From: Tetramitus jugosus
Taxonomy: Eukaryota > Protista > Heterolobosea
Assembly (NCBI GenBank): GCA_937625935.1
Contig: OW569358.1
Location: 475,434-539,433 of the forward strand
Direction: 5' to 3'
DNA: 64,000 nucleotides
Positions 3,256-64,000 of the stretch are shown here, piece by piece. Below the pieces are notes generated by a model. It was not told the origin of the DNA and did not search any database. It was given only the letters and a program-made list of their open reading frames with translations. Made by a program: the position numbers and the translations under genes. Every line of letters starts with the position of its first letter. The stretch's first letter is position 1.

Positions 3256-4344
3256 TTAGAGCGCATAAACAAGAGCTCCAGACATTACTTCATAAGTTGA
3301 CAACTTTTCTCCATCGGCCATCTCCCTTTGATTGAACACTAGTCTCACATCGGTCAGACCTGTTCTTCTCATCACAACATGTTTGATATCTCTGATCAAC
3401 GTGTTGTGTGAAATGTTGTCGCTCATCGTTATCGTTGTCTTTCCACCTCTCATTTGTCTAATGTGAATCACCATGGGCTTCACAACCATAAACATTGTAA
3501 TGTGATGATTCACGTTTTCAACATCATCCTCATCATTCTTCTTATCCATCATATCGAACAAATCAATCAAGTGCTGATCCGTCTTTAGTGACTGTCCATT
3601 CTTGACCAGTGTAATATCGTCCACATGGCATCCACCCAACTTTTTTGACAACCACTTTTTCACACTCTTGACCTTGCGTCTTTCAGGGTTCTCTGTGATG
3701 AACAAATATTCATCATTGAGGGCAGAAGTGCTGTTTTTGGAGGTGGAGTTTAGTGTTTGAGAAGAGGACATCATTTCTTGAACACTCTTGATGTGAACAT
3801 GAAAGTGGTGCTGCTGAGCTTGCTTCTCATGTTGCTCTTCAGTCGTCGTGGCAGACGTTGACTCCAAAATCTTGTCTTGTTGCTGTTCATTTTTGTGTAA
3901 TGAATGAAGGCTCTCTAGTTGGGCAACTTGTTTTGTTTCTGCTGCCGTAGTTGTTGCTGTTGTGGGCACCACCACTCTTGGTTGAACAACAACAAGGGAT
4001 TGAGTGAGATCATCCAACAACGAGGGATTGACACATGAGGCGTCATTTGTACAAGAAAGATCATGATAAGGATGTGTGTAATTCAAAAAAGCTTCATTGG
4101 AGTGAGCAAGAAACAGCACATCGTCTTGTAACAACTCTCGCAGCTCTTCTAATCGACCGCCGCGGCTCGTGTAGGCCGTCAATTCCTCAAAAGACGAGAA
4201 TTGTAATTTTTTGGCGCAGGCGATTAAAAAGGCGCCAAAATCCAGTTGGAAGGAAGAAGTGTTGTCGGATCGTTCAAGGAGGATCACTCGGCCTCTTTGA
4301 CGTCTGGTATCACCATTTTTGAAGATATTAATGCGAAGTAACAT
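3256..4344 (-). CDS. Multi-ubiquitin-fold protein: N-terminal KHA/doublecortin-like domain plus C-terminal ubiquitin-like domain(s)
   Basis: The N-terminus (RINIFKNG..GRVI..FLIACAKKL..AYTSRGGRLEELRELLQDDVLF) resembles the KCTD9-type KHA/DCX-like fold. The C-terminus (IRDIKHVV..TG..VRLVFNQREMADGEKLSTYEVMSGALVYAL) is a UBL without a GG end. Confidence 0.7.
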   Translation of the reverse strand: MLLRINIFKNGDTRRQRGRVILLERSDNTSSFQLDFGAFLIACAKKLQFSSFEELTAYTSRGGRLEELRELLQDDVLFLAHSNEAFLNYTHPYHDLSCTNDASCVNPSLLDDLTQSLVVVQPRVVVPTTATTTAAETKQVAQLESLHSLHKNEQQQDKILESTSATTTEEQHEKQAQQHHFHVHIKSVQEMMSSSQTLNSTSKNSTSALNDEYLFITENPERRKVKSVKKWLSKKLGGCHVDDITLVKNGQSLKTDQHLIDLFDMMDKKNDEDDVENVNHHITMFMVVKPMVIHIRQMRGGKTTITMSDNISHNTLIRDIKHVVMRRTGLTDVRLVFNQREMADGEKLSTYEVMSGALVYAL

Positions 4345-4476
4345 GATTTTCGAGTTTTTTTCAAGTCTTGCTCTCGTTTCTATGAGCCGACAAAAACTCT
4401 TTTGTTGTTCGGTTCCTGGATTTGAACTTTCAAAGGAATCGCGAACACGGAATATTTTAATAGTCCTATCTCTAAC

Positions 4477-5352
4477 CTACGACAGATCATCTCTTTGTTG
4501 TTTCTTCCGCTCCCAAGGCTTGAGCTTTGACTTTGCTGTTTTGGTGGAGGTCCTAGTTGTTGTGGTAGGTGTGTTGTTGCTCTGTCTCGTGCTTGGAACA
4601 CGTGCTGTTGCTTCAGTTGAGGTTGACTCCTGAACAGCAACAGAGGGTCGAGCTTGTTTCGAAACCAAGTCTTGCTCGCTCTTCTTGGGACTGGAATCCA
4701 ACATATCCAAGAACGAATCTGATAGGTATTGCTTCCGTCGTTCTTTAAGCTTGGAGAGCATTTCAGACGGAGACGAAGAAGATGACAGCTCTGGTACTGG
4801 TTCTTCGTTTTGCACAGTATGTGATCCCAGCTCTTCATCTTGTTGTTGACTTGAGCTAAACCTCGGAGCTTTCTCTTCTGGTGGAGATATCGCAGCCTCT
4901 GTAAGAGCATGATCTTTGGCATCTGGATGAGAATTGGAGGACGTTTTAATCTCCAGTTGCTTCATGCTGTCTCCAGTCAGCTGCAGCTTCCAACCCCACT
5001 TGGAGAAGAGGTTGTTCGTAGCACTCAACCATGACCTCACTTGTTGCCAGATGGACATGGAACGAATGGATCTTGCAATGGGATGACCGGATCGAACAGT
5101 AATAGAACACACAGATATAAGAAGACCAACAAAAGAGGCAATGGTCAACCACTTGCTCACTGCATCACCAAATGTTTTTGTTTTTCTCCTTTTTGCCGTT
5201 CTTGTTGTTGATCCTGTTGTATTCTTATATTGAAGAGGGAAAGTGTGCAACAGTGATCGTTGCATCATGTGATACAATTCCTGATCATCACCGTAGAGAA
5301 GAGCCAGTGTCGTTGGATGATTGTTTGCATTGTAGCTGCCAAAATACTCCAT
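4477..5352 (-). CDS. Hypothetical single-pass membrane protein
   Basis: 291-aa ORF with one hydrophobic segment (WLTIASFVGLLISVCSITV) and an S/T/K-rich tail. Confidence 0.6.
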   Translation of the reverse strand: MEYFGSYNANNHPTTLALLYGDDQELYHMMQRSLLHTFPLQYKNTTGSTTRTAKRRKTKTFGDAVSKWLTIASFVGLLISVCSITVRSGHPIARSIRSMSIWQQVRSWLSATNNLFSKWGWKLQLTGDSMKQLEIKTSSNSHPDAKDHALTEAAISPPEEKAPRFSSSQQQDEELGSHTVQNEEPVPELSSSSSPSEMLSKLKERRKQYLSDSFLDMLDSSPKKSEQDLVSKQARPSVAVQESTSTEATARVPSTRQSNNTPTTTTRTSTKTAKSKLKPWERKKQQRDDLS

Positions 5353-5458
5353 TTTGCGCGGGAACTTTCTTTTTTTTCAGTCTTGTGTGGTGGGATTGCG
5401 TGAGAGCTGTTTTGATCAGCATGCTGTGGTTGAGTTTGACAACACTTTTTTTATTCTG

Positions 5459-5734
5459 TTACGATGGTCTTGTTCCGTTCTGAATCTGTCCTAGGTCTTC
5501 AGTCAGACTTTGTAGATAAGCAGCCATGAGATAATGCTCCATCGTAGCTTCATCATCATCACCCTGTGACTTCACACTCACAGCATACTGCAGCGTTTCC
5601 ATGTTGGCCCACATTGTTGTCACACTCTGATCTTGATTGGTCTTGTTGACCTGTAGTACCAAAATGCTGCATTGAAGATCACTTGTATATTGTGGTTGTT
5701 GCTGTTGTTGAGAGTACAATTGTTGTTGGTTCAT
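5459..5734 (-). CDS. Small hypothetical Q-rich protein
   Basis: 91-aa ATG-initiated ORF in a gene-sized gap; no recognisable domain. Confidence 0.3.
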   Translation of the reverse strand: MNQQQLYSQQQQQPQYTSDLQCSILVLQVNKTNQDQSVTTMWANMETLQYAVSVKSQGDDDEATMEHYLMAAYLQSLTEDLGQIQNGTRPS

Positions 5735-6044
5735 ACTGTTGTTGTTGCGGTGGTGGTCTTCACTGGTTGCTGGTTAAGGTGTTGTTGGATCAAGTGTCTC
5801 TCGAGATATTTGGTCAGGTTCAAAGCTTACTTTGAAGAGTTAGTTGCGGTAGTGGTGTTTTGTTGGTGTTGGATATCATGATGTTGCGCGTCGTGACAGC
5901 AACATTTGAAAGGCGTCATTCACGACGGTACCACGGTACTGATCATGAAGGTATTTTGTTTTTGGTTTCTGTTGGTATCCCAGATATTATTGGGACTACG
6001 AATTTGGCGGGAAATTTAGTGTGAATTTATTGGGAACTGTTCCT

Positions 6045-7268
6045 CTACTTTCGCACGAGTGACATCATCTTCGTTCTTCCCTTTTGTGTCAGTTTTTCAC
6101 CAGCTTCTCTACCGCTCAACTTGATCACCTTATGGTTACCTATGACTCCATCATATGGTCCCATTGTCAATGAATAGGATGACCTTACTGAATCGAAGGT
6201 CCTTTCTACTAGTAACTCATGGTTGTCGACACCTTCGGAGAGCAATACAATGTTTTTGGCTGCAATTTTTCCTTCTTCACTTCCGCCGCTCGCTAGTTTC
6301 TCGCAGGGTACACTGTTCGCATCCCCAACTGAGAATATACTGCTGTGGTTGATGGATTGTAGATGGGTGTTGACTTTGACAAGGCCAGATTCATCAAGAG
6401 CAACCCCACTGTCTTTCAACCACTCTGTAGCTGGTTTCATACCTCCACACCACAAGATCATGCTCACATTGTCGATAGATGCGCTATCCTTGTCCAGTGA
6501 GTACCCAGATGGTGTAAGTAAGACAGTTTTCTTCACTTGGCAGTTCATCTCATCTAAGGAGCATCCACTTTGTTCAACTCTGGCTCTTCTTCCGAGATGA
6601 ACTTCAACACCATTCTCTCTCATGAAATTCATCAGATATCCACGAAGAAGTTCTGTCTGGACCTTATCCTTCAATGACGATCTGCTATGCACAAGAGTAA
6701 TCTTAAATGGTTGTTCTCTTGACTTGTTCATTTCGACGAGTTCACCCACCATTTCAATGCCCAAGCTTCCTCCACCTACAATGACGACATGATTGTTATC
6801 TGGAGAGTTCAACTGCTGCTGGAATTTCTCAAAATCTTTCTTTCGCATGTCTGGATTCACAAACTCATTAAGATTGGGTTTGATGTAAGGAGTAGCATAG
6901 TAGCAACCGTTGGCCAGAACTAGGAAATCATATGGCAGTTCCTCATGTTCCTGCTGATCTCTTTTTCGGATAGTAATATGCTTCAATGAAGCGTTCAATG
7001 ACACAGCTTCAGAATGAGTAAGCATGTTCACAGTGTGCCCATTTCTCTCGTATATTGGTTTCAAATCTTTCAGTAACACGTGAGTTCCGGAGTTGAACTC
7101 TGATGGTTGGGCTAAAAATCTGAGCGAATAGATGGATGATTCTACGAAGTCCTTCTTTTCGATGACAGAAATGTTAAATGGTACAGCCGACTGGCTGGTG
7201 AGTCTAGATGCACATGTTAAGCCGGAAATTCCAGCTCCTACGATCACAATGTTCTTCTTTGGAGTCAT
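6045..7268 (-). CDS. FAD/NAD(P)-dependent oxidoreductase, AMID/FSP1 (AIFM2)-like
   Basis: Two Rossmann motifs (IVIVGAGISG; VVIVGGGSLGIEMVGEL), YDFLVLANG, and VKVNTHLQS...IFSVGD. Confidence 0.85.
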   Translation of the reverse strand: MTPKKNIVIVGAGISGLTCASRLTSQSAVPFNISVIEKKDFVESSIYSLRFLAQPSEFNSGTHVLLKDLKPIYERNGHTVNMLTHSEAVSLNASLKHITIRKRDQQEHEELPYDFLVLANGCYYATPYIKPNLNEFVNPDMRKKDFEKFQQQLNSPDNNHVVIVGGGSLGIEMVGELVEMNKSREQPFKITLVHSRSSLKDKVQTELLRGYLMNFMRENGVEVHLGRRARVEQSGCSLDEMNCQVKKTVLLTPSGYSLDKDSASIDNVSMILWCGGMKPATEWLKDSGVALDESGLVKVNTHLQSINHSSIFSVGDANSVPCEKLASGGSEEGKIAAKNIVLLSEGVDNHELLVERTFDSVRSSYSLTMGPYDGVIGNHKVIKLSGREAGEKLTQKGRTKMMSLVRK

Positions 7269-7658
7269 ATCTTGGTTGTGTTCCTTGTTGCATTTTCATC
7301 TCAAGGACAATAAACCTTTTAAATGGACGATACCACGAATATTGAAGGAATAGTGGGATTTCTAATGTTTACCCGTCGAAGGTTTTATTCCAAAAGCTCT
7401 GCGATTTTGGAAGGAGACAGGAGAAGTTCTTATTATGAGTAAGAGAAAGCCCAAATATGCTAACTATTACTTTTTGTCCTCCCGGAAGTCCGAAGGTCAT
7501 AAAGTGCGAAAAGGAATTGGAATTCGGCATTGGCGCAAATCGCTCGGATACAGTGTATTTCTTTATCTCATATGTTACTCCCATACAATGACCTGGGTTG
7601 TTCGATGATAGGGCAGTTTGTAAACAGGAAAATTTTACTTCCTTTCATCAAACTTTGT

Positions 7659-8861
7659 TTATTTGAAAACGGACTTCCAGGGATCTTCAACGACTTGAAC
7701 CTTCTTTAGTGCATTCTTTTGATTGACAATTGTGGTGTGTAGGTCACCTTTGAGATCAGCTGCAATGTTCTTGGCACTGTTCAACATCTTTGTTGGTGCA
7801 AGTTTCTTTGCAAACTTACTGACTCCTCCGAAAGACTTCTTTTCTGTGGTTTCCTCTTGATCTTCTACAAATTGTTGCTCCACCTCTTCCTCCTCCTCTT
7901 GTTGAATATGAGTATTGGTGTCCACTTGTTGAGCAGAATGAATAATTGCATCTCTATGCTTCTCATACACATCCTTTGACCATTCATTCTCTGCATAGTA
8001 ACTCTTGAGCTCATGAATTTGATCGACTTGTTCCTCAGACAACTCCAAAGAACTGAGATATTCATTGTCATACTCCAAATCATCAGCAGCATCATCAGCT
8101 GAGCTCTCTTGCTTGGTCACCACCACCTCTTCTTCCTCTTCATCATATTCTTCTTCTTCTTCTACTTGGAGATTCAAATCATCTTGTTCAATTACAACCT
8201 CTTGTTGTTCCGGTTCTTCTTCAACGACATTCGTGGAAATTACACTTAGCAAGTCCAATTTCATTTGTTGATACAATTCGATTGAAATTTCACCCTTGTT
8301 CACTTGTTCTACATATTGCAACAATAGAGTCAATTCTTCTAAACCAATGTCCAACTCTGCAATCTCTTCATCCATGAACAATGTTGCTACCGGTGCGGTT
8401 TTGGAAGTTTGTTCTTCTTCATTCAACAATTGTTCGCTCACCACCACCGCCACCTCTTCTTCTTCTTTTTCTTCTTGGTTTTTATCTTCTTCTTCTTCTA
8501 CAATTACACGAGAGTGTTCTTCTTCTTTTTGTTCAACACTACTCGGAACAACATGTGGTACAGCTTCAACTTGAACTTGTTTCGCTTGTTGTTCCACAAC
8601 AAGTGTGACAAATTGTGAATCCTCCTGTTGAGATTGTTGTTTGGTTGTGACAATTTTTGTTGTCTCATCATCATCATTATTGTTATGTACTACTACTACA
8701 GTGGAATGTTCTTGTTGTTGTTGTGGTGTCACAACCTTCTCATCATGATGATCTGGTTGTTCTTGCGTTGGAGAAGCAGAAGAAGAACCGAGTGAATTTT
8801 TAATGAAGGCACCCACGAGGACAATACCAACGATAAGTCCAGATATTACAGCAAATGACAT
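7659..8861 (-). CDS. Acidic low-complexity protein with N-terminal membrane anchor
   Basis: 400-aa ORF; hydrophobic N-terminus (AVISGLIVGIVLVGAFI) and E/Q-rich body. Confidence 0.75.
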   Translation of the reverse strand: MSFAVISGLIVGIVLVGAFIKNSLGSSSASPTQEQPDHHDEKVVTPQQQQEHSTVVVVHNNNDDDETTKIVTTKQQSQQEDSQFVTLVVEQQAKQVQVEAVPHVVPSSVEQKEEEHSRVIVEEEEDKNQEEKEEEEVAVVVSEQLLNEEEQTSKTAPVATLFMDEEIAELDIGLEELTLLLQYVEQVNKGEISIELYQQMKLDLLSVISTNVVEEEPEQQEVVIEQDDLNLQVEEEEEYDEEEEEVVVTKQESSADDAADDLEYDNEYLSSLELSEEQVDQIHELKSYYAENEWSKDVYEKHRDAIIHSAQQVDTNTHIQQEEEEEVEQQFVEDQEETTEKKSFGGVSKFAKKLAPTKMLNSAKNIAADLKGDLHTTIVNQKNALKKVQVVEDPWKSVFK

Positions 8862-9079
8862 TTCTTGAGGATTGCAAGTTACTTATTGAATAGGGACGGA
8901 CGTCTGGTGGTGTGCTTTCGGTTTTGTTGGTGTCAAACGTTGGGTCAATAGCCGTGAAGGGTTTTTGGTGCGAATCATGCACAGGTGACTTTGACATGAG
9001 ACTTCACCTGCCAAATTTTTTAAAACTCCGCGTACCCTATCTTCCGATTGTGATGTGAAACGAAAGCAAATCGTGTGTG

Positions 9080-10465
9080 ATGACCATTGAGACAACTTCG
9101 GTGGAAGATTTGTTGAAGATCGAATGTGATCCAAGCTCTAGAGCCACAACCTTCACTCGTGACTATCTCACACCTTTCCTGTTGAGCAAAGAGAGAGATG
9201 ACTTGTGTTTGATACGAAATATACCCTTGTCAAGGTCAAGTCCCATTCAATTGTCTGCCATTCAATTAAAATCTGAACTATCTCAGGCCACTTCTGGCAC
9301 GGATAAGGATAAAAATGCTGTTTGTAAACTGTTGCCGCTCGTGGTCAACCGGCAACCAAAATTCTGGATTGACAAGAATTTGGCTTACACGGTTTCTCCT
9401 TTCAATCATTTCATTACTTATGGATTGGACGAGTTGCACATGTACCCTATATTTTGGGTTGTTCAATGGTTACTAACAGGTTTATTGTGGGTGATGGCTC
9501 TCGTGCTTCAATTAGTCAAGATTGACCGTATTGTTATGCCTTGTAATTACATGTTGTCCACGAGTTTACACTCTGGAATGAATGGCAAGGAAATTGAGTC
9601 TATCACTCATTATTTGAAAGAAAAGTACTCTGACAGTGCAATTATGATACGAGGTGTCAACGACGCCATCACCGCTGATTTGAAAACTAGATTGGAGAAG
9701 CAAGGCTATAAAATGCTGATTAGTCGAGTCATTTATTGGTCTGATCCATCAAAACCTGAAACATGGAAAATGAGATCGTTGAATCAAGACCTCAAATTAT
9801 TTTACGATATTGTGGAACCTTTTGAACCATACCTCAAACTCCAACTGCCCAGGAAATCGAATCTGGTTCCCCACCAGCACCGCTACAAACTACTGGACAA
9901 CGAGTTGTTATCAACAAAATTACAGAATTCAAATCCGATAGAGAGACAGGAGATTCTTTTGCGATGCGAACAAATCTATAACATGTTGTATCTGGGCAAG
10001 TACTCGAAGTGCAACATACAATTTACCTGGCAATTATTGGACCAATTTTTGAAAAAGGACACATGGCAATTCAGAGCTCTTGAAAATATAGAAACTGGAG
10101 TCATTGATGGAATTATTGGCTTTTATCTTCTGGACTATGTGGGCTATGATACTGAGGGAATGCCATCCACTCAACAACGAATAATGACCGTTCCACTTTT
10201 AGGATATGACACATCAAAACAAGATGGATATCTCTATAGACTTTTATCTTGTGTCATTGCTATAGAAGGCAAACGAAACGGTGCCATTCTCAATCAATCT
10301 AGCGGGGCTTCAAAATTTAAGATGTTTCGAGGTTGTTCCAAAGCGTTTGAGTACTTTGCTATATATGATAAGCACTTGCCGTGGTACAGAAAATGCATTT
10401 GGTCCCTAATGTATTACTTGCTGGAATTCTGTGCAAAACCAGTTGTTCTAAAATATGAACTCTAG
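9080..10465 (+). CDS. Bacterial-like GNAT/FemAB-fold hypothetical protein
   Basis: Intronless 461-aa ORF. Motifs CNYMLSTSL, AIMIRGVN, ISRVIYW, YNMLYLGKYSKCNIQFT, PLLGYDT, LYRLL, LNQSSGASKFKMFRG recall a bacterial NNWLLSTNL/SRQVY/LYLxKYS/GAxxFKxxRG family. Confidence 0.65.
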   Translation: MTIETTSVEDLLKIECDPSSRATTFTRDYLTPFLLSKERDDLCLIRNIPLSRSSPIQLSAIQLKSELSQATSGTDKDKNAVCKLLPLVVNRQPKFWIDKNLAYTVSPFNHFITYGLDELHMYPIFWVVQWLLTGLLWVMALVLQLVKIDRIVMPCNYMLSTSLHSGMNGKEIESITHYLKEKYSDSAIMIRGVNDAITADLKTRLEKQGYKMLISRVIYWSDPSKPETWKMRSLNQDLKLFYDIVEPFEPYLKLQLPRKSNLVPHQHRYKLLDNELLSTKLQNSNPIERQEILLRCEQIYNMLYLGKYSKCNIQFTWQLLDQFLKKDTWQFRALENIETGVIDGIIGFYLLDYVGYDTEGMPSTQQRIMTVPLLGYDTSKQDGYLYRLLSCVIAIEGKRNGAILNQSSGASKFKMFRGCSKAFEYFAIYDKHLPWYRKCIWSLMYYLLEFCAKPVVLKYEL

Positions 10466-58669: not shown

Positions 58670-60058
58670 ATGATCATCACATTCATCATTGCGCTCACTA
58701 CAACCATTTTCATTGGGAGAAGAGTATCACTATGGTTCGACGTTCAATGCTTCTACTTTCAAAAACTGTTTCAATCATTGTTCATGTATTCAGTTACTCA
58801 AGTGATACAAAGAGTAGTTGGAAATCGCTTTTCTCCCTTCTCTTTTCCTGACATTAATAATGGACATTCATCTAAAGAATGGTTACGTTCCGTTATACAA
58901 CACAAGATGAGTGAGAAGAATGTGACGGTTCCAAAGATTGAGAAAGTGGAATTCTCCTCAGAGAGTATTCATGGTGGGTTGACTGGTGATCTGAAAAAGT
59001 TAATTATTACTTGGTCAGATAACTCTGATGAGAGGCTGCCAAAATCTCTGATCGTAAAGTCAACATATCCTACATTAGTTAGTTTCATTGGATGTGCATT
59101 CACTGAAAGCTCTAGAGAAGTATGGTTCTCAAAACAATTTGCACAAGATGAGATATTTGGAACGCCAATTGTCTATTATGCTGAGACATCAGAATTCACT
59201 AGACAATATTTAATTGTAATGGAGGATTTGTCAGATCGTGCTGTACTGGTTGGGCATCTGTTGGGAAATCAGTGTTGGGGGAAGAAGAAAATTCCTAGCA
59301 ACGTTGAACAAGATCCAGTTCGTATAATAGAAGTTCTTTACAAGCAAGCAGCTAAAATGCATGCGAAGTTTTGGAGAGATGAATCACTATTGAGAAATTC
59401 ATGGATGAAATCTGCTGAATATCTGAAAGGTCAAAATCGAGTGAAATGGGAATTTTCCATGGAATCAATCAGACACAAGTGGAACAGAGTCAAGAGCAGA
59501 ATCAATAAGAATCAGACTGGAGTGAAATGGTCTGACAAGTTGATAAAAGAGGCAGATGCAACCTTGAGAAACACCAGCTGGGAAAACTTTCAGAGAGCTT
59601 TTGATGTTAAAGATAAGAACACTGCTTTCACACTATGTCATGGAGATTACCATGGAGGAAATGTGTTATGGTCACAAGATCAGAAAAACAGTAGAATTCC
59701 TGCTTACAATGTAGATTGGAGTGAGGCCGGTGTATTCTGTCCATTCACTGATCTTGCACAATTTGTGATCAGTCATCTCCCAATTGAAACGAGAAGAAAA
59801 CACGAGTACAATCTATTCAAAACCTACTATGTTCATCTGATCAAAAACGGTGTATCAGCTGAGACATTCCCATTGGATGCTTGCTGGGAAAGATACAAAA
59901 GTGGTGGAATCGAACGTTGGATTCAAATGTTAATCTTGTTGGATACACTGGATCTTCCAGAATTCTCCATCCAATGGTTCCATGATCAAGTAGCTGCATT
60001 CATTGAAGATCACGGCTCTCATCGTGCCATGCTCTGTACGGCTTATTGTTTCCCGTAA
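58670..60058 (+). CDS. Ecdysteroid-kinase-like / APH-choline-kinase superfamily protein
   Basis: LPKSLIVK, RE.WF, LIVMEDLS, AKMHAKFW, TLCHGDYHGGNVL, VDWSE...DLAQF; N-terminal hydrophobic anchor. Confidence 0.85.
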   Translation: MIITFIIALTTTIFIGRRVSLWFDVQCFYFQKLFQSLFMYSVTQVIQRVVGNRFSPFSFPDINNGHSSKEWLRSVIQHKMSEKNVTVPKIEKVEFSSESIHGGLTGDLKKLIITWSDNSDERLPKSLIVKSTYPTLVSFIGCAFTESSREVWFSKQFAQDEIFGTPIVYYAETSEFTRQYLIVMEDLSDRAVLVGHLLGNQCWGKKKIPSNVEQDPVRIIEVLYKQAAKMHAKFWRDESLLRNSWMKSAEYLKGQNRVKWEFSMESIRHKWNRVKSRINKNQTGVKWSDKLIKEADATLRNTSWENFQRAFDVKDKNTAFTLCHGDYHGGNVLWSQDQKNSRIPAYNVDWSEAGVFCPFTDLAQFVISHLPIETRRKHEYNLFKTYYVHLIKNGVSAETFPLDACWERYKSGGIERWIQMLILLDTLDLPEFSIQWFHDQVAAFIEDHGSHRAMLCTAYCFP

Positions 60059-60116: not shown

Positions 60117-61744
60117 TCATTCAGTTTCCAGGATCATCATTCGCTGAAGAGTCAGTTGCATGTATGGTCCCAAATAACAATGAACTGCAAATAGAAGACA
60201 TTTCCAAGAAGCGATGCAATCAGCCATTGCATCGTGAGCATTATAGTCACCAAAGCCAAAAGTCTTGTGCAATTCTTCCAGAGCATATGAGTTCAGACCT
60301 GGTACTAAAAATCGAACCAATTTCATTGCGTTGCAGTAAGTAACAAAAGGAGGATTCATCGTACCAGTCTCTGCAAGGGCATTGTCCAACATGTTGATAT
60401 CGAAATAGTTGTTGGCCCAATAGAATATCAATATGTTTCCATAGACATTCAATTCCTCATCAAATCTGGCCCAAACGGTCATGACCTCGGATGGAGTCTT
60501 CGCGGTTCTAATCTCCTCAGACTCAGCTGTCTTATTGAACTTGTCTTTGTTCTTTGCTGATCTGGGTAGTGGCTCAATATATTCTCTCTTCGCGTACGAT
60601 CCCATTCCCTTCTGATCGAATACACTCACCTTTGCAGTCTGATAGAATAGCTTACCTCCAGGTCTCTTACAATTAGATTTCCAGTAATTCTCGCTCCTGT
60701 AACAAGACTCCCAATCCATAAAATAACTTCTGAGATTCGCTTCTGGTATGTATGAAGGCTTTCGATCCAAGTTGAGATCAGATAAAATCCTGGAAAAGGT
60801 GTTCTCAGGAGATCCCACAATCTGCAGCACGTTGTTCCTGACTATCTCCTTCTCATGTTCATTCAATTCGAGATAGTGTAGAAATGACTTGAGCTTAAAC
60901 CTCATGTCCTCTACACATAGATTGCTGTAGGCAATTCGATGCACCTTAAGGTAATCCTTAAGCTTCTCTCCCTTCAATAAATCTGCCTCATCGCTTGTAA
61001 TCGGTTCCAGATAGATAACATTTTTTCCCCTAGCATCAGTTTCGCTAGCAACTTCAGTGTATTCAGCAGATTGACTGAATGACTGCCCATTAGTTTCTAC
61101 CGATGGTGGCAATAGTACATAAACCTTTTGCTTGGCTTTCTTCTTGGCTTTCTTCTCCTCATACTGTGCGACGAGATCAATAGCGTTGTTATATTCGTTC
61201 ATCAGGTCGTCTCTGTCCAGTTTCTTCTGTGACTTACCTTTCTTCATATCCAGAACCATAGCATTGATCTTCTCGCGATCACTAGAAGATATGCTTCGAA
61301 TGAAATCCAGTGGAGGAAACTCGTTTCGAATTTATTTGACTCGGCTTGAATGAAACCAAGCACTACCTCCGGGGACCTGCTTCATTGACATACTGCAGCT
61401 ACCCACAATAGATTCTGCCAGACAACTAGTGGAGGCCACATATCCCGGCTTAGATTTGTCATGATCTGTGTATTGTGCGTACCGTCCCCCTGATCGGAAA
61501 TCAATGAGGAATTTCTAATACCTCAATCCATGCACCAAGAGTTACCTTTGTCTGGGAAATAGCAAATTCACGGTACGTCTCGACGCATTTGCGCATGATT
61601 GGCATCTTATCTTTCACACACGCAGAATCATATATCTGGTAGTCTGGATCAAACACAAAATTCGGTAGTAGCTCCGGAGAGTTAACCAATGTGTTCATGG
61701 AATCAACGTACGTAATCAATGATGGATAAAACTCAAATGCATTC
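60117..61744 (-). mobile_element. 5'-truncated transposase-like + SAP-like + DEDDh 3'-5' exonuclease fusion remnant
   Basis: Track ORF 60117-61259 has ExoI FMDWES, ExoII NNYFD and ExoIII AHDAMAD, plus SAP-like LKGEKLKDYLKVHRI. The frame extends upstream through one TAA (61332-61334) and a possible 31-nt intron or frameshift (61515-61545) to the telomeric tract at 61745. Confidence 0.6.
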
Positions 61745-61767
61745 TTGGGTTGGGTTTGGGTTTGGGT
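61745..61767 (+). repeat. Interstitial telomeric tract 1
   Basis: TTGGGTTGGGTTTGGGTTTGGGT, same orientation as the terminal array. Confidence 0.9.
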
Positions 61768-62199
61768 CTGTCTTGTTGTTAAGGAAAACCCGAGAATTTT
61801 GCTGTATTTGGTATCAGAGCGTTGAAATTTACAGTTTAGTGTAAAAAAAAAAAATTGAGTTCGGTTGAGTTGTGGCTTACAGGTTGAGGGAGTAAAAAGA
61901 AGACATATAGGACAAGAGCTGCATGACTTTTGGAGTCTATGATCAGATCGGAGATATTGAGGTTCAACGAACAGGGAGGTTCACGGTCCAGGACCGTGAA
62001 ATGATTTCCTGAATTTCATCTCAGGTCATTTGTCAGTGGAGCTTTTTGGGATCCAGCAAAGAATTTCGACCAATGGGCGAAGTGATTGTAACGGATTAAG
62101 AAGGAATACAACGCACCAACATGAATATGACAGAAGACTTGTGAAGGAGTTCAACCTGAAATACAATGACAGTCAATAGTTAGCTATTTGTCTTGATCA

Positions 62200-62217
62200 T
62201 GGGTTTGGGTTTGGGTT
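62200..62217 (+). repeat. Interstitial telomeric tract 2
   Basis: TGGGTTTGGGTTTGGGTT, same orientation as the terminal array. Confidence 0.9.
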
Positions 62218-62435
62218 GTCACATATCGGCTAGCCAAGACTGGCTGAATACAGTCAACTGTACGTTGTAAAGGTTGTTTTTGTATTCTTTATGGTCTGAA
62301 ATGTTCAACTTAAGCTTTGTGTGGAAAAACTCACTATAGATTGTGAACTAGCCCCCAAACTGTGATATGGAGTTGGGTTTTGAACTCAGAAAACCCAAAT
62401 CTCTATGAGCTATTGACTGATGAGTCGATAAAAAA

Positions 62436-62750
62436 TAGGCGGAACCAGCCATTTCGGCCTAGAAAAGCCTTTTTACAGAGGAACTCTCTGGTTCCGCCTA
62501 AAAGTTGGACTCACAAGCGGAACCAGCTGGTTCCGCCTAAAAGAGCTTTTTTTCAGAGGAACTATCTGGTTCCGCCTAAATTATCGACTTTACAGAGGAA
62601 CCAGCTGGTTCCGCCTAAAACTTGCTTTGTCAGTGGAACTATCTGGTTCCGCCTGTAATATGACTTTTTCAGTGGAACCAGCTGGTTCCGCCTAAACGCA
62701 CACATGTCTAAGAGGAACCAGATAGTTCCGCATAAAAAGATTTCTACAGA
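62436..62750. repeat. Subtelomeric ~39-bp array: 8 palindromic cores GGAAC(CAG/TAT)CTGGTTCC-GCCTAAA with variable 13-16 nt linkers
   Basis: Cores start at 62441, 62480, 62519, 62558, 62597, 62635, 62674 and 62714 (spacing 39,39,39,39,38,39,40). Confidence 0.95.
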
Positions 62751-63208
62751 GAAACTTGTAACTGAGATCAGAAAGGTTCGGACATCTGAAGGAAGATACA
62801 TTGTGACAGAGACGGTTGAACTGCAAGATTGAAGTCCTTCATAAATTGTTTGTAATGCTTAGTCGGTGAATACAATAGCCTGATGAATGCATTCTCGACT
62901 GGGAATGACATTGTCCAGTAACCGAAACGTGGGAAAAGGAAAAGACGAAGGACACGGCAGGAAATATTTTGTAACAAAGAATGATGAAGGAAGGTTCAAC
63001 ATGGATGAAGGAGTGTTGTTAGAATTACAATGAGAGTTTTGACATCGAGTGCAGAGATGCATGGAGCAAATTGAGAGGAAGTTGTAACAAGTGTTAGGAA
63101 GAAGTATCAAGGAAGTGAGAACAAGATTACAATGGTGGACATTGTATTCCTGCATAAAAATTGATTTTGAGATGGTTTTGTGATTTTGGTGAGAAAATAG
63201 ATTTTGAC

Positions 63209-64000
63209 TTGGGTTTGGGTTTGGGTTTGGGTTTGGGTTTGGGTTTGGGTTTGGGTTTGGGTTTGGGTTTGGGTTTGGGTTTGGGTTTGGGTTTGGGTTT
63301 GGGTTTGGGTTTGGGTTTGGGTTTGGGTTTGGGTTTGGGTTTGGGTTTGGGTTTGGGTTTGGGTTTGGGTTTGGGTTTGGGTTTGGGTTTGGGTTTGGGT
63401 TTGGGTTTGGGTTTGGGTTTGGGTTTGGGTTTGGGTTTGGGTTTGGGTTTGGGTTTGGGTTTGGGTTTGGGTTTGGGTTTGGGTTTGGGTTTGGGTTTGG
63501 GTTTGGGTTTGGGTTTGGGTTTGGGTTTGGGTTTGGGTTTGGGTTTGGGTTTGGGTTTGGGTTTGGGTTTGGGTTTGGGTTTGGGTTTGGGTTTGGGTTT
63601 GGGTTTGGGTTTGGGTTTGGGTTTGGGTTTGGGTTTGGGTTTGGGTTTGGGTTTGGGTTTGGGTTTGGGTTTGGGTTTGGGTTTGGGTTTGGGTTTGGGT
63701 TTGGGTTTGGGTTTGGGTTTGGGTTTGGGTTTGGGTTTGGGTTTGGGTTTGGGTTTGGGTTTGGGTTTGGGTTTGGGTTTGGGTTTGGGTTTGGGTTTGG
63801 GTTTGGGTTTGGGTTTGGGTTTGGGTTTGGGTTTGGGTTTGGGTTTGGGTTTGGGTTTGGGTTTGGGTTTGGGTTTGGGTTTGGGTTTGGGTTTGGGTTT
63901 GGGTTTGGGTTTGGGTTTGGGGTTTGGGTTTGGGTTTGGGTTTGGGTTTGGGTTTGGGTTTGGGTTTGGGTTGGGTTGGGTGTTGGGTGTGGGGTTGTGG
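63209..64000 (+). repeat. Telomere, (TTTGGG)n
   Basis: About 790 bp of near-perfect TTTGGG, G-rich strand running 5'->3' to the sequence end; irregular only in the last ~85 nt. Confidence 0.98.

What the first reader, a model, noticed from the sequence alone, without database searches (positions are those of the whole stretch)
62436..62750. Repeat-spacer array of palindromic cores about 460 bp from the telomere (CRISPR-like layout in a eukaryote)
Seen: eight units at near-constant 39-bp spacing, each with a conserved ~23-nt core followed by a variable linker (AAGCCTTTTTACAGA, GTTGGACTCACAAGC, GAGCTTTTTTTCAGA, TATCGACTTTACAGA, CTTGCTTTGTCAGT, TATGACTTTTTCAGT, GCACACATGTCTAAGA, AGATTTCTACAGA). 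Units 3, 5 and 7 carry the perfect 16-bp palindrome GGAACCAGCTGGTTCC. Units 4 and 6 carry GGAACTATCTGGTTCC, and unit 2 a one-base variant of it. Unit 8 carries the exact reverse complement of that variant (GGAACCAGATAGTTCC) inside unflipped flanks. Unit 1 is degenerate but shows a longer dyad (TAGGCGGAAC...GCCTA). Inference: conserved cores and spacing with diverged linkers suggest selection on phased dyad sites rather than neutral satellite decay. Candidates are binding sites for a dimeric protein (telomere/origin factor or transposase) or a transcript processed at hairpins into ~39-nt RNAs. The linkers are short and related to each other, so true spacer acquisition is doubtful, and no cas genes are present.
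Basis: partly seen in the sequence, partly recalled or inferred. Interest (0 to 1): 0.85.

Follow-up and report, generated by a model that had tools for sequence, protein, structure and literature searches.

The report
Recombinase-site array in telomere-capping element
The 39-bp palindrome array is real but is not CRISPR-like: it is the binding-site domain of a gene-less miniature copy of a mobile element, encoding a Cre-like recombinase, that lives inside the telomeres of this protist and caps many of its chromosome ends.

Summary
In detail: eight units at 39-bp spacing with the cores described, 459 bp from a TTTGGG telomere.

The linkers are not spacers. All 20 copies of the array, on 18 chromosome ends, carry the same eight linkers in the same order. 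They differ only by whole-unit loss or gain.

The palindrome arms are conserved. They show 2 changes in 80 columns, against 0.34 changes per column in linkers and 0.41-0.56 in flanks.

The array sits in a roughly 1-kb ORF-less module (window 62200-63208) that begins right after an 18-bp telomere seed and ends at a conserved terminus where the telomere starts. Sister modules cap about 24 of 112 ends. They keep the same start, terminus and 38-39-bp period (66 bp in one family), but carry different palindromes with mirrored changes.

Full-length relatives, one at C43 left and four in other assemblies, carry such arrays next to a coiled-coil ORF and a 710-800-aa protein with a Cre-like tyrosine-recombinase fold (Foldseek E 4.8e-9). 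Each recombinase lineage has its own palindrome.

Best reading: tandem binding or recombination sites of an element-encoded recombinase, kept in a non-autonomous derivative. Binding itself was not tested.

First readers noted similar arrays on other pieces of this genome.

The parts
61745..61767 (+). Interstitial telomere seed 1 (TTGGGT-type, 23 bp). It marks the start of module A.
   Evidence: TRF 61745-61767; row C15R 2745-2766.
61768..62199 (+). Module A: a roughly 430-bp seed-bounded block shared by more than 20 chromosome ends. It holds a degenerate dyad of the sister-family type (CAGTGGAGCTTTTTGGGATCCAGC, near 62034) and a perfect 22-bp dyad near 61980.
   Evidence: query 746-1202 matches many ends at 85-100%; D4; B1 list.
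62200..62217 (+). Interstitial telomere seed 2 (18 bp). Module B always starts exactly after such a seed.
   Evidence: 18 different upstream contexts, with seeds of 12-24 bp.
62218..62435 (+). Module B leader. The conserved start is (TT)GTCACATATCGG. A stem of telomere-like sequence lies at 62365-62406.
   Evidence: (I14). The same start motif is found in the autonomous elements L069 and L067.
62436..62750 (+). The array: 8 units of 38-40 bp. Each unit is a 16-bp dyad (arms GGAAC/GTTCC, variable 6-bp centre), a tail GCCTAAA and a unit-specific T-rich linker ending in CAG.
   Evidence: Conservation. Pair counts.
62751..63186 (+). Module B tail (non-coding).
   Evidence: 84-100% identity to other ends; no ORF with a family match.
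63187..63208 (+). Conserved distal terminus (TGGTGAGAAAATAGATTTTGAC), shared by all sister families and joined directly to the telomere.
   Evidence: 24 subtelomeric matches with up to 3 mismatches, all oriented toward the contig end.
63209..64000 (+). Telomere, (TTTGGG)n.
   Evidence: 131.5 copies, 98% matches.

Best explanation
The array is the dyad-site domain of a roughly 1-kb, ORF-less, telomere-embedded module (window 62200-63208). The module is a miniature, internally deleted relative of a family of mobile elements that sit between telomere-repeat tracts. Those elements encode a coiled-coil ORF1 and a Cre-fold, Crypton-like tyrosine recombinase. Autonomous members carry 38-40-bp arrays of 16-22-bp palindromes just upstream of the genes, and in two cases also downstream. 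Each recombinase lineage has its own palindrome.

The most likely role of the units is as tandem binding or recombination sites for dimers of the element-encoded recombinase. The inverted arms would be the monomer sites and the variable 4-6-bp centre the crossover or spacer region. Recombination between arrays flanking the genes would delete the genes and leave modules like this one.

Shown: the anatomy, the copy census, the fixed linkers, the slower evolution of the arms, the mirrored changes between families, the physical linkage to the recombinase gene, and the recombinase fold.

Inferred: that the recombinase, rather than ORF1 or a host factor, binds the dyads; that recombination occurs there; and how the modules reach the telomere.
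For: (1) There are 20 arrays on 18 ends. All lie within 8 kb of a contig end and all point toward the telomere; 43 of 43 exact 18-mers are subtelomeric with end-specific strand.

(2) The same eight linkers occur in the same order, and the only differences are in-register unit loss or gain.

(3) Fitch events per column among 16 distinct copies: core 0.094, tail 0.22, linker 0.34, flanks 0.41 and 0.56. Core versus linker gives p=2e-5. The arms show 2 events in 80 columns.

(4) Sister modules with homologous start, leader and terminus carry other palindromes: GGAGCTCATGAGCTCC, GGTGGAGC..GCTCCACC and GGCCCGT..ACGGGCC. Period is 38-39 bp, 66 bp in the GGTGGAGC family. Over 93 units, 93.7% of cells pair, against 31-55% when the partner is slid. 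Three pairs changed on both sides.

(5) At C43 left, 7 units precede and 3-4 units follow a cluster of three ORFs with no seed in between.

(6) Homologues of its 761-aa ORF at 59-64% identity lie on seed-bounded contigs of other assemblies. Each has its own 38-40-bp dyad array upstream (L067, L069, L070), or on both sides followed by a sister-family tail (L071).

(7) An AF2 model of residues 150-520 has pLDDT 87.6. Foldseek finds Cre at E 4.8e-9 and TM 0.57/0.64, then XerH, XerA and Tn1549 Int. R311, K344/K346, R441, R444, W476 and Y485 are invariant in 7 sequences.

(8) The recombinase family has about 20 copies in this genome, all near contig ends.
Against: No binding or recombination was tested, and no RNA or circle data are available. 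ORF1 or a host factor could be the binder.

One recombinase element (C15 left) has no array. Distant relatives carry 159-bp repeats instead.

The dyads (5-9-bp arms) are shorter than lox or FRT arms. The module tail shows no similarity to the C43 gene cluster, so the deletion origin is shown only for the sister family (L071 versus C1R and C46R).

Short-tract gene conversion between identical cores could mimic purifying selection. The units used for pair counting were collected with near-palindromic patterns, which inflates the percentage paired. The number of independent compensatory events is small, about 6-7.

Everything involved is subtelomeric, so mere proximity is weak evidence.
Confidence: 0.55

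Rival explanations
1. Stem-loop array. The dyads act as hairpins in a transcript or a single-stranded DNA intermediate of the element. Possible roles are a 5' leader of ORF1, a structured part of an RNA copied onto chromosome ends by the Penelope-like reverse transcriptase that also lives at these telomeres, or a Xist A-repeat-like protein-recruiting RNA.
For: Base pairing is the property conserved across families with different arm sequences. The central 4 nt vary freely (AGCT, ATCT, CATG, TTTT, AAAA, TGAA), as tetraloops would. Several variants are G-T wobbles on the + strand, namely units 2, 4 and 6 here and GGCTCTGCC in the sister family. The linkers are T-rich. Reverse-transcriptase elements with the same seed-bounded layout exist at the ends. 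Both strands fold far better than shuffles, with z about -10.
Against: Within one array all units keep the same arm sequence while the linkers have diverged to about 55-85% identity. That points to sequence-specific recognition or homogenisation, not to structure alone. G-T and A-C mismatches show no clear strand bias. No transcript evidence exists. No Rfam family reaches threshold and no hammerhead is found. Stems of 5-6 bp are weak.
Confidence: 0.2
2. Promoter or operator array. The dyads are regulatory sites just upstream of ORF1 and the recombinase gene, bound by ORF1 or a host transcription factor. In ORF-less modules they are left over, or they drive telomere-directed (TERRA-like) transcription.
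For: In L069, L070 and L071 the arrays end 120-200 bp before the ORF1 start codon. The window's array lies 459 bp upstream of the telomere, much as the tandem repeats of human TERRA promoters do (this comparison rests on my own knowledge).
Against: Arrays also occur downstream of the recombinase gene (C43 left and L071). Lineage-specific palindromes argue against a single host factor. ORF1 has no recognisable DNA-binding domain, only weak coiled-coil matches.
Confidence: 0.12
3. Ordinary subtelomeric minisatellite. It spread with its flanks by ectopic recombination or break-induced replication between chromosome ends. The palindromes have no function and are kept uniform by gene conversion.
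For: Linkers are identical at all ends. Copies 100% identical exist on different chromosomes: C15R equals C44R, and C5L equals C38R and C32R. Unit number varies from 6 to 9 among complete arrays; truncated copies hold fewer. There is a 78-bp higher-order repeat.
Against: The arms evolve 4-20 times more slowly than linkers and flanks. Dyad symmetry is kept through mirrored changes in at least seven palindrome types with the same 38-40-bp period, including elements from other assemblies. Conversion that spares the linkers would need very short tracts.
Confidence: 0.1
4. CRISPR-like repeat-spacer system, or hairpin-processed 39-nt guide RNAs with acquired spacers.
For: Only the layout: a conserved palindromic core followed by a variable linker at constant spacing.
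Against: No locus-specific spacers exist. The same eight related 14-16-nt linkers occur in the same order in 20 arrays and in groundwater and soil contigs. Linker 1 is even shared with sister families. The sister family has a 38-bp period. No Rfam match reaches threshold.
Confidence: 0.01

Closest known systems
Crypton DNA transposons and their non-autonomous derivatives (tyrosine-recombinase elements of eukaryotes; Kojima and Jurka 2011, PMC3212892)
   Same: The element encodes a tyrosine recombinase and has no transposase or reverse transcriptase of its own. ORF-less derivatives keep only the two ends. The language-model neighbours of the protein are the Crypton-derived families NDC10_II, DUF3504 and DUF3435.
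   Different: The protein is not detected by Pfam Phage_integrase or by PDB sequence search. The elements are confined to telomere tracts with a fixed orientation. They carry tandem arrays of palindromes, whereas the Cryptons described have at most 4-6-bp terminal direct repeats. They also carry an extra coiled-coil ORF1.
Telomere-repeat-specific tyrosine-recombinase elements: TATE of Leishmania braziliensis (PMC6681497) and endogenous nimaviruses of crustaceans (PMC10871703)
   Same: These are recombinase-encoding elements flanked on both sides by telomeric repeats. [quoted passage not shown] Here every module starts right after GGG.
   Different: TATE is a retrotransposon with a reverse transcriptase, and the nimaviruses are 200-360-kb viral genomes. 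Neither paper describes palindrome arrays or miniature derivatives capping chromosome ends, as far as I read them.
Core sites of Cre/loxP, FLP/FRT and XerCD/dif
   Same: Inverted arms flank a short, variable and sometimes asymmetric centre. A dimer binds each site, and site and enzyme diverge together. The fold of the associated protein is closest to Cre.
   Different: The arms here are 5-9 bp (16-22 bp in all, about 28 bp with the conserved flanks), against 11-13 bp in those sites. Here 4-9 sites stand in tandem at 38-40 bp. No cleavage or exchange has been shown.
Tandem palindromic protein-binding arrays of episomes: sopC of plasmid F (43-bp repeats, each with a dyad) and the family of repeats of EBV oriP (30-bp repeats, each with an 18-bp EBNA1 dyad). 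This comparison rests on my own knowledge.
   Same: The layout is the same: a conserved dyad plus an AT-rich linker, repeated 8-20 times and bound by dimers of an element-encoded protein.
   Different: Those arrays serve partition or tethering of episomes. No such role is shown here, and the proteins are unrelated.
Seed-separated subtelomeric modules: yeast X and Y' elements, and the endonuclease-deficient Penelope-like elements Athena and Coprina (PMC8557442)
   Same: Modules are stacked head to tail at chromosome ends and separated by short telomeric tracts. Distal truncations are capped by telomere. A Penelope-like reverse-transcriptase element with this layout coexists in this genome.
   Different: Module B shares no sequence with the reverse-transcriptase element and has no hammerhead motif. 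Its full-length relatives encode a recombinase, not a reverse transcriptase.

Membership tests
CRISPR array | Spacers are unique to each locus and acquired from foreign DNA. | tested here: not met
   The same eight related linkers occur in the same order in 20 arrays. Environmental contigs show only variants that are also seen among the paralogous copies.
CRISPR array | Spacers of about 26-72 nt and associated cas genes. | tested here: not met
   The linkers are 14-16 nt. The neighbouring ORFs are a kinase-like and an exonuclease-like gene. The genome is eukaryotic with telomeres. No dedicated cas search was run.
Tyrosine-recombinase (Crypton-like) element, non-autonomous member | Autonomous relatives encode a protein with the tyrosine-recombinase fold and catalytic residues. 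| tested here: met
   The AF2 model has pLDDT 87.6. Foldseek finds Cre at E 4.8e-9, then XerH, XerA and Tn1549 Int. R311, K344/K346, R441, R444, W476 and Y485 are invariant. Assigning these residues to catalytic roles is my inference.
Tyrosine-recombinase (Crypton-like) element, non-autonomous member | The ORF-less copy shares both ends with an autonomous element. | tested here: inconclusive
   Met for the sister family: L071 against C1R and C46R is 98% identical over the array and 92-93% over the tail. For the window's own family only the leader and array are shared with the C43-left element. That element is truncated before the tail, and no tail similarity was found.
Tyrosine-recombinase (Crypton-like) element, non-autonomous member | Sequence-level membership in Pfam Phage_integrase, NDC10_II or DUF3435. 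| tested here: not met
   No Pfam hit for the proteins of this genome. Relatives give only sub-threshold hits: NDC10_II at 23.9 bits against a cutoff of 26.3, and Phage_integrase at E 0.005. The Atlas neighbours belong to that clan.
Recombinase core site (lox/FRT/dif type) | Inverted arms around a short central region. | tested here: met
   The arms are 5-9 bp and the centre is 4-6 bp and variable.
Recombinase core site (lox/FRT/dif type) | Bound and cut by the cognate recombinase. | not testable with these tools
   This needs EMSA or a recombination assay.
Neutral subtelomeric minisatellite | Uniform substitution rate along the unit. | tested here: not met
   Core 0.094 against linker 0.34 events per column, p=2e-5.
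Non-autonomous partner of an endonuclease-deficient Penelope-like element (Athena type) | Shares a 3' end with the reverse-transcriptase element, or carries a hammerhead motif next to reverse-complement telomeric repeats. | tested here: not met
   No similarity to the reverse-transcriptase element. No hammerhead at E up to 1 in the window, or up to 0.1 in six ends.
Structured RNA family (Rfam) | A match at the family's gathering score. | tested here: not met
   Only mir-580 at 29 bits, against a gathering score of 83.

The most novel reading that the evidence does not exclude
The dyad arrays are the att-like sites of a previously undescribed class of telomere-dwelling Crypton-like elements. 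A Cre-fold recombinase moves gene cassettes on and off chromosome ends, excising and integrating between arrays. Each recombinase lineage owns a private palindrome, in the manner of incompatibility groups. The left-over miniature modules have become the standard cap structure of about a fifth of the chromosome ends, so chromosome-end architecture in this protist is largely built and remodelled by site-specific recombination.
Probability: 0.3. Interest if true: 0.8.

Novelty: new variant of a known kind. Interest (0 to 1): 0.62.

Why it matters
If the dyads are the recombinase's sites, this is a compact, testable case of a eukaryotic site-specific recombination system with several natural enzyme-site pairs. 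At least five recombinase lineages at 59-66% identity each have a different 16-22-bp palindrome. That is useful for studying how recombinase specificity evolves, and possibly as a source of orthogonal recombinase and site pairs.

It also shows that the terminal kilobase of many chromosomes in this organism is made of mobile-element derivatives stacked between short telomere tracts. Three kinds coexist: recombinase elements, their miniatures, and Penelope-like reverse-transcriptase elements. This bears on how subtelomeres are built and exchanged.

For the scan, it settles a motif that several first readers flagged as CRISPR-like on different pieces of this genome.

Tried and rejected
- **CRISPR-like reading:** rejected by the census.
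- **Coding repeat:** a 98-aa ORF crosses the array because 39 is 13 codons, but it has no family match, and the sister arrays have 38-bp periods.
- **Rfam:** only a sub-threshold mir-580 match and no hammerhead.
- **Strand of a putative hairpin RNA:** G-T versus A-C mismatch counts show no clear bias, and both strands fold equally well.
- **Similarity of modules A and B to the reverse-transcriptase element:** none.
- **Pfam PF00589 over the whole genome:** no hit.
- **PDB sequence and profile searches of the recombinase and of the reverse transcriptase:** nothing.
- **First AF2 model, built from 7 sequences:** too poor to use, pLDDT 44.
- **Read laying back-joints 63195 to 62200:** at first these looked like circle or tandem junctions. 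They arise because I left the telomere out of the laid stretch, so the telomere letters of contigs align to the internal seed. They are not evidence for circles.
- **RNA evidence:** no RNA run holds the stretch.
- **Metagenome pattern scans** for the core plus tail, and for the terminus plus telomere: 0 matches.
- **Organism identity:** not determined. Paper searches on TTTGGG telomeres gave no candidate, and Lemnamoeba was excluded. Holders of the sequence are one coded organism plus groundwater, soil, freshwater and hot-spring metagenomes.

Full report
**1. Observation**

The sequence at 62436-62750 is as described. TRF reports a 39-bp period (6.6 copies) and a better-scoring 78-bp period with 82% matches. 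The 23-nt core plus tail has 7 matches with up to 3 mismatches in the window, against 0 in shuffles. In register there are eight units with spacing 39,39,39,39,38,39,40. The telomere (TTTGGG, 131 copies) begins at 63209, 459 bp downstream.

**2. Genome-wide census**

The window is the right end of contig 15 of a 26.35-Mb, 56-contig assembly.
- The degenerate first unit occurs 20 times, always within 8 kb of a contig end.
- All 43 exact copies of an 18-mer spanning core and tail are subtelomeric. They lie on the minus strand at left ends and the plus strand at right ends.
- After fetching the ends, every array printed in register shows the same eight linkers in the same order.
- Arrays differ by loss or duplication of whole units (6 to 9 units in complete arrays) or by truncation.
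- Contigs from groundwater and soil metagenomes carry the array with only the variants also seen among the paralogous copies.

So nothing like spacer acquisition occurs.

**3. Constraint**

I aligned the 16 distinct copies of the roughly 1-kb block that contains the array and counted Fitch changes on their tree.

| Region | Columns | Events | Events per column |
|---|---|---|---|
| 16-bp cores | 128 | 12 | 0.094 |
| Tails | 64 | 14 | 0.22 |
| Linkers | 121 | 41 | 0.34 |
| Flank before the array | 223 | 91 | 0.41 |
| Flank after the array | 483 | 271 | 0.56 |

Core against linker gives p=2e-5. The ten arm positions show 2 events in 80 columns. The last four linker bases (CAG plus one) are also nearly fixed. 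Linkers evolve like the flanks.

**4. The module**

The array lies in a block (window 62200-63208) that always starts immediately after a short interstitial telomere tract of 12-24 bp. It does so in 18 different upstream contexts. When complete, it ends at the same terminus, joined directly to the telomere. Copies truncated distally are followed by a new seed plus another module, or by the telomere (C51 left, C7 right, C10 left). This agrees with an earlier first-reader note on nested seed-bounded modules.

The ends I fetched hold several other seed-bounded modules.
- Module A lies at window 61768-62199.
- A second module type without dyads caps about 40 ends.
- A 5.6-kb element encodes a reverse transcriptase. 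Its relatives include GIY-YIG-bearing and bdelloid-rotifer proteins, so it is Penelope-like. It is found only at ends, with its 3' side toward the centromere. Endonuclease-deficient Penelope-like elements are known telomere dwellers (PMC8557442).
- Module B shares no sequence with the reverse-transcriptase element and has no hammerhead.

**5. A superfamily with different palindromes**

One seed-adjacent start resembled that of module B. Searching with that leader and with the conserved terminus found sister modules at other ends. All have a related start, a leader with a stem of telomere-like sequence, an array of dyads and the same terminus. That terminus occurs at 24 ends. The dyads differ between families:
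- GGAGCTCATGAGCTCC, as seven strict 38-bp units at C14 left, and also at C1 right and C46 right;
- GGTGGAGC, 6 nt, GCTCCACC, at nine ends;
- GGCCCGT, 2 nt, ACGGGCC, at C20 left and C11 left.

The flanks (a T-run, then CWG before the dyad, and GCCTA plus A/T after it) are shared. The first linker is 78% identical between families, above all shuffles.

Compared with the window's half-site GGAACCAG, the half-site GGAGCTCA differs at 4 of 8 positions, and each change is mirrored in the other arm. I aligned 93 distinct units without gaps. The 7-pair helix is paired in 93.7% of cells, against 86.7% in shuffles (0 of 500 reach it) and 31-55% when the partner is slid. Three pairs changed on both sides.

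Two caveats apply. The units were collected with near-palindromic patterns, and the independent events are few. The families themselves, however, were found through their starts and termini, not through palindromy.

**6. Link to a recombinase**

At C43 left an array of 7 units runs, without a seed, into three ORFs (144, 564 and 761 aa). Twenty bases after the stop of the last ORF, 3-4 further units follow, then a seed.

The 761-aa ORF is 66% identical to a 778-aa ORF at C15 left. It belongs to a family of about 20 copies, all near contig ends. It has no Pfam or PDB sequence match. Its language-model neighbours are NDC10_II, Phage_integrase, DUF3504 and DUF3435 clusters.

The family is rare, with 67 hits among 1.84 billion representatives. 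With 34 of these sequences aligned, AlphaFold gives a confident model of residues 150-520 (pLDDT 87.6, pTM 0.70). Foldseek then finds Cre (E 4.8e-9, TM 0.57/0.64 over about 370 columns), followed by XerH, XerA, Tn1549 integrase and IntI.

R311, K344/K346, R441, R444, W476 and Y485 are invariant in seven sequences. The nine-residue distance from W to Y equals that of Cre W315-Y324. The Cre numbering comes from my own knowledge.

**7. Independent elements**

Five homologues at 59-64% identity lie on short contigs of other assemblies.

| Locus | Layout | Dyad and array |
|---|---|---|
| L069 | seed, start TTGTCACATAACG, array, ORF1 (399 aa), recombinase (760 aa), telomere tract | four 38-bp units of GGCCGTCC, 6 nt, GGACGGCC |
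| L070 | seed, array, ORF1, recombinase, tail, telomere | four 39-40-bp units of GGCCCACGTGTGGGCC plus GCCTAAAA |
| L067 | seed, start TTGTAACATATG, arrays, an ORF, recombinase, seed | two 39-bp arrays of GGTGGCACC, 4 nt, GGTGCCACC, with an alternation of two unit types like the window's |
| L071 | arrays on both sides of ORF1 and recombinase, then a sister-family tail | GGAGCTCATGAGCTCC |

L071 matches the ORF-less modules of C1 right and C46 right at 98% over the array and 92-93% over the tail.

So for that sister family the ORF-less modules are internal-deletion derivatives of recombinase elements; for the window's own family only the leader and array are shared with the C43-left element. 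The arrays are a constant feature of this subfamily, and each recombinase lineage has its own palindrome. Two qualifications remain: one recombinase element (C15 left) has no array, and distant relatives, which also abut TTTGGG tracts, carry 159-bp repeats instead.

**8. Mechanism**

The pattern has five parts: sequence-specific conservation of the arms within a family, mirrored divergence between families, a variable 4-6-bp centre, physical linkage to a Cre-fold enzyme, and enzyme-site covariation. Together this is the pattern of recombinase or operator sites.

I therefore read the units as tandem binding or recombination sites for dimers of the element's recombinase (confidence 0.55). Recombination between direct arrays flanking the genes would give the miniature modules.

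The rivals are hairpins acting in RNA or single-stranded DNA (0.2), a promoter or operator array (0.12), a neutral minisatellite homogenised by conversion (0.1), and a CRISPR-like system (0.01).

How the elements enter telomeres is open. Tyrosine-recombinase elements that integrate into telomeric repeats are known: TATE (PMC6681497) and the endogenous nimaviruses (PMC10871703). Every module type here starts after GGG, which would also fit addition onto a chromosome end.

**9. Limits**

No binding, recombination, RNA or circle data exist. The back-joints arise from my choice of reference stretch and are not evidence. The organism is not identified.

Noticed in passing
L050 (C10:601000-610999) 3661-9263; also C3 left, C17 left, C48 right, C9 both ends: A roughly 5.6-kb seed-bounded element with ORFs of 1232 and 322 aa. 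The large ORF has a weak RVT_1 match. Its relatives include a GIY-YIG-bearing protein and bdelloid-rotifer proteins, so it is Penelope-like. Copies occur only at chromosome ends, with the 3' side toward the centromere. No hammerhead motif was found.
   Followed up: partly
about 40 contig ends, e.g. L033 (C43 left) oriented 8297-9284: A second terminal module type of about 1 kb. It starts GTACGCAGTATTTAAATAACC, ends ...GATTTTTGAGAAGAAAGTGAA, has no dyad array, and caps more ends than the dyad-bearing superfamily (42 matches to its terminus).
   Followed up: partly
L044 (C8 right) 2043-2060; L046/L051 (C48 right) 1895-1911; L061 (C47 right) 2550-2568: Some interstitial seeds are phased variants of the telomere repeat: TTAGGG three times at C8 right, and TTGGGG-type at C48 right and C47 right. 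The terminal telomeres are almost pure TTTGGG.
   Followed up: no
C7 right (L048 about 2572), C47 right (L061 about 2549), C51 left, C43 left oriented about 7360, C10 left oriented about 4216: Of about 10 distally truncated modules, 4 break inside or within 2 nt of a dyad core, and one breaks in linker 7. Each break is followed at once by telomere repeats. This hints that the dyads are preferred break, healing or crossover points, but the numbers are small.
   Followed up: partly
L031 (C5:1775-3104, minus strand): A recombinase gene fragment is cut at about residue 430 and followed directly by a seed and a complete module B. The module was therefore added onto a truncated recombinase element.
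   Followed up: no
window 60117-61259 (minus strand) and 58670-60058 (plus strand): The last genes before the modules are a 380-aa ORF with an RNase_T exonuclease match, lying about 490 bp before the first seed, and an intact 462-aa ecdysteroid-kinase-like (EcKL/APH) ORF.
   Followed up: no
P0054 (921 aa): A distant relative of the telomeric recombinase carries a C-terminal chromodomain (E 4.7e-10), which suggests chromatin targeting in some lineages.
   Followed up: no
L064 (C46 right) 2335-2450; L063 (C14 left) 2825-2865: Just before the dyad array, the leaders of the sister modules hold 3 to 10 tandem copies of a 12-bp unit, CTCAAAACCCAA. This is telomere-like sequence in the reverse orientation. 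In the window it is reduced to one stem, at 62365-62406.
   Followed up: no
L075 and L076 (metagenome contigs), 184-644: Recombinases at 27-30% identity from environmental assemblies also sit within about 2 kb of TTTGGG tracts, but are preceded by 159-bp tandem repeats instead of 39-bp dyads.
   Followed up: no
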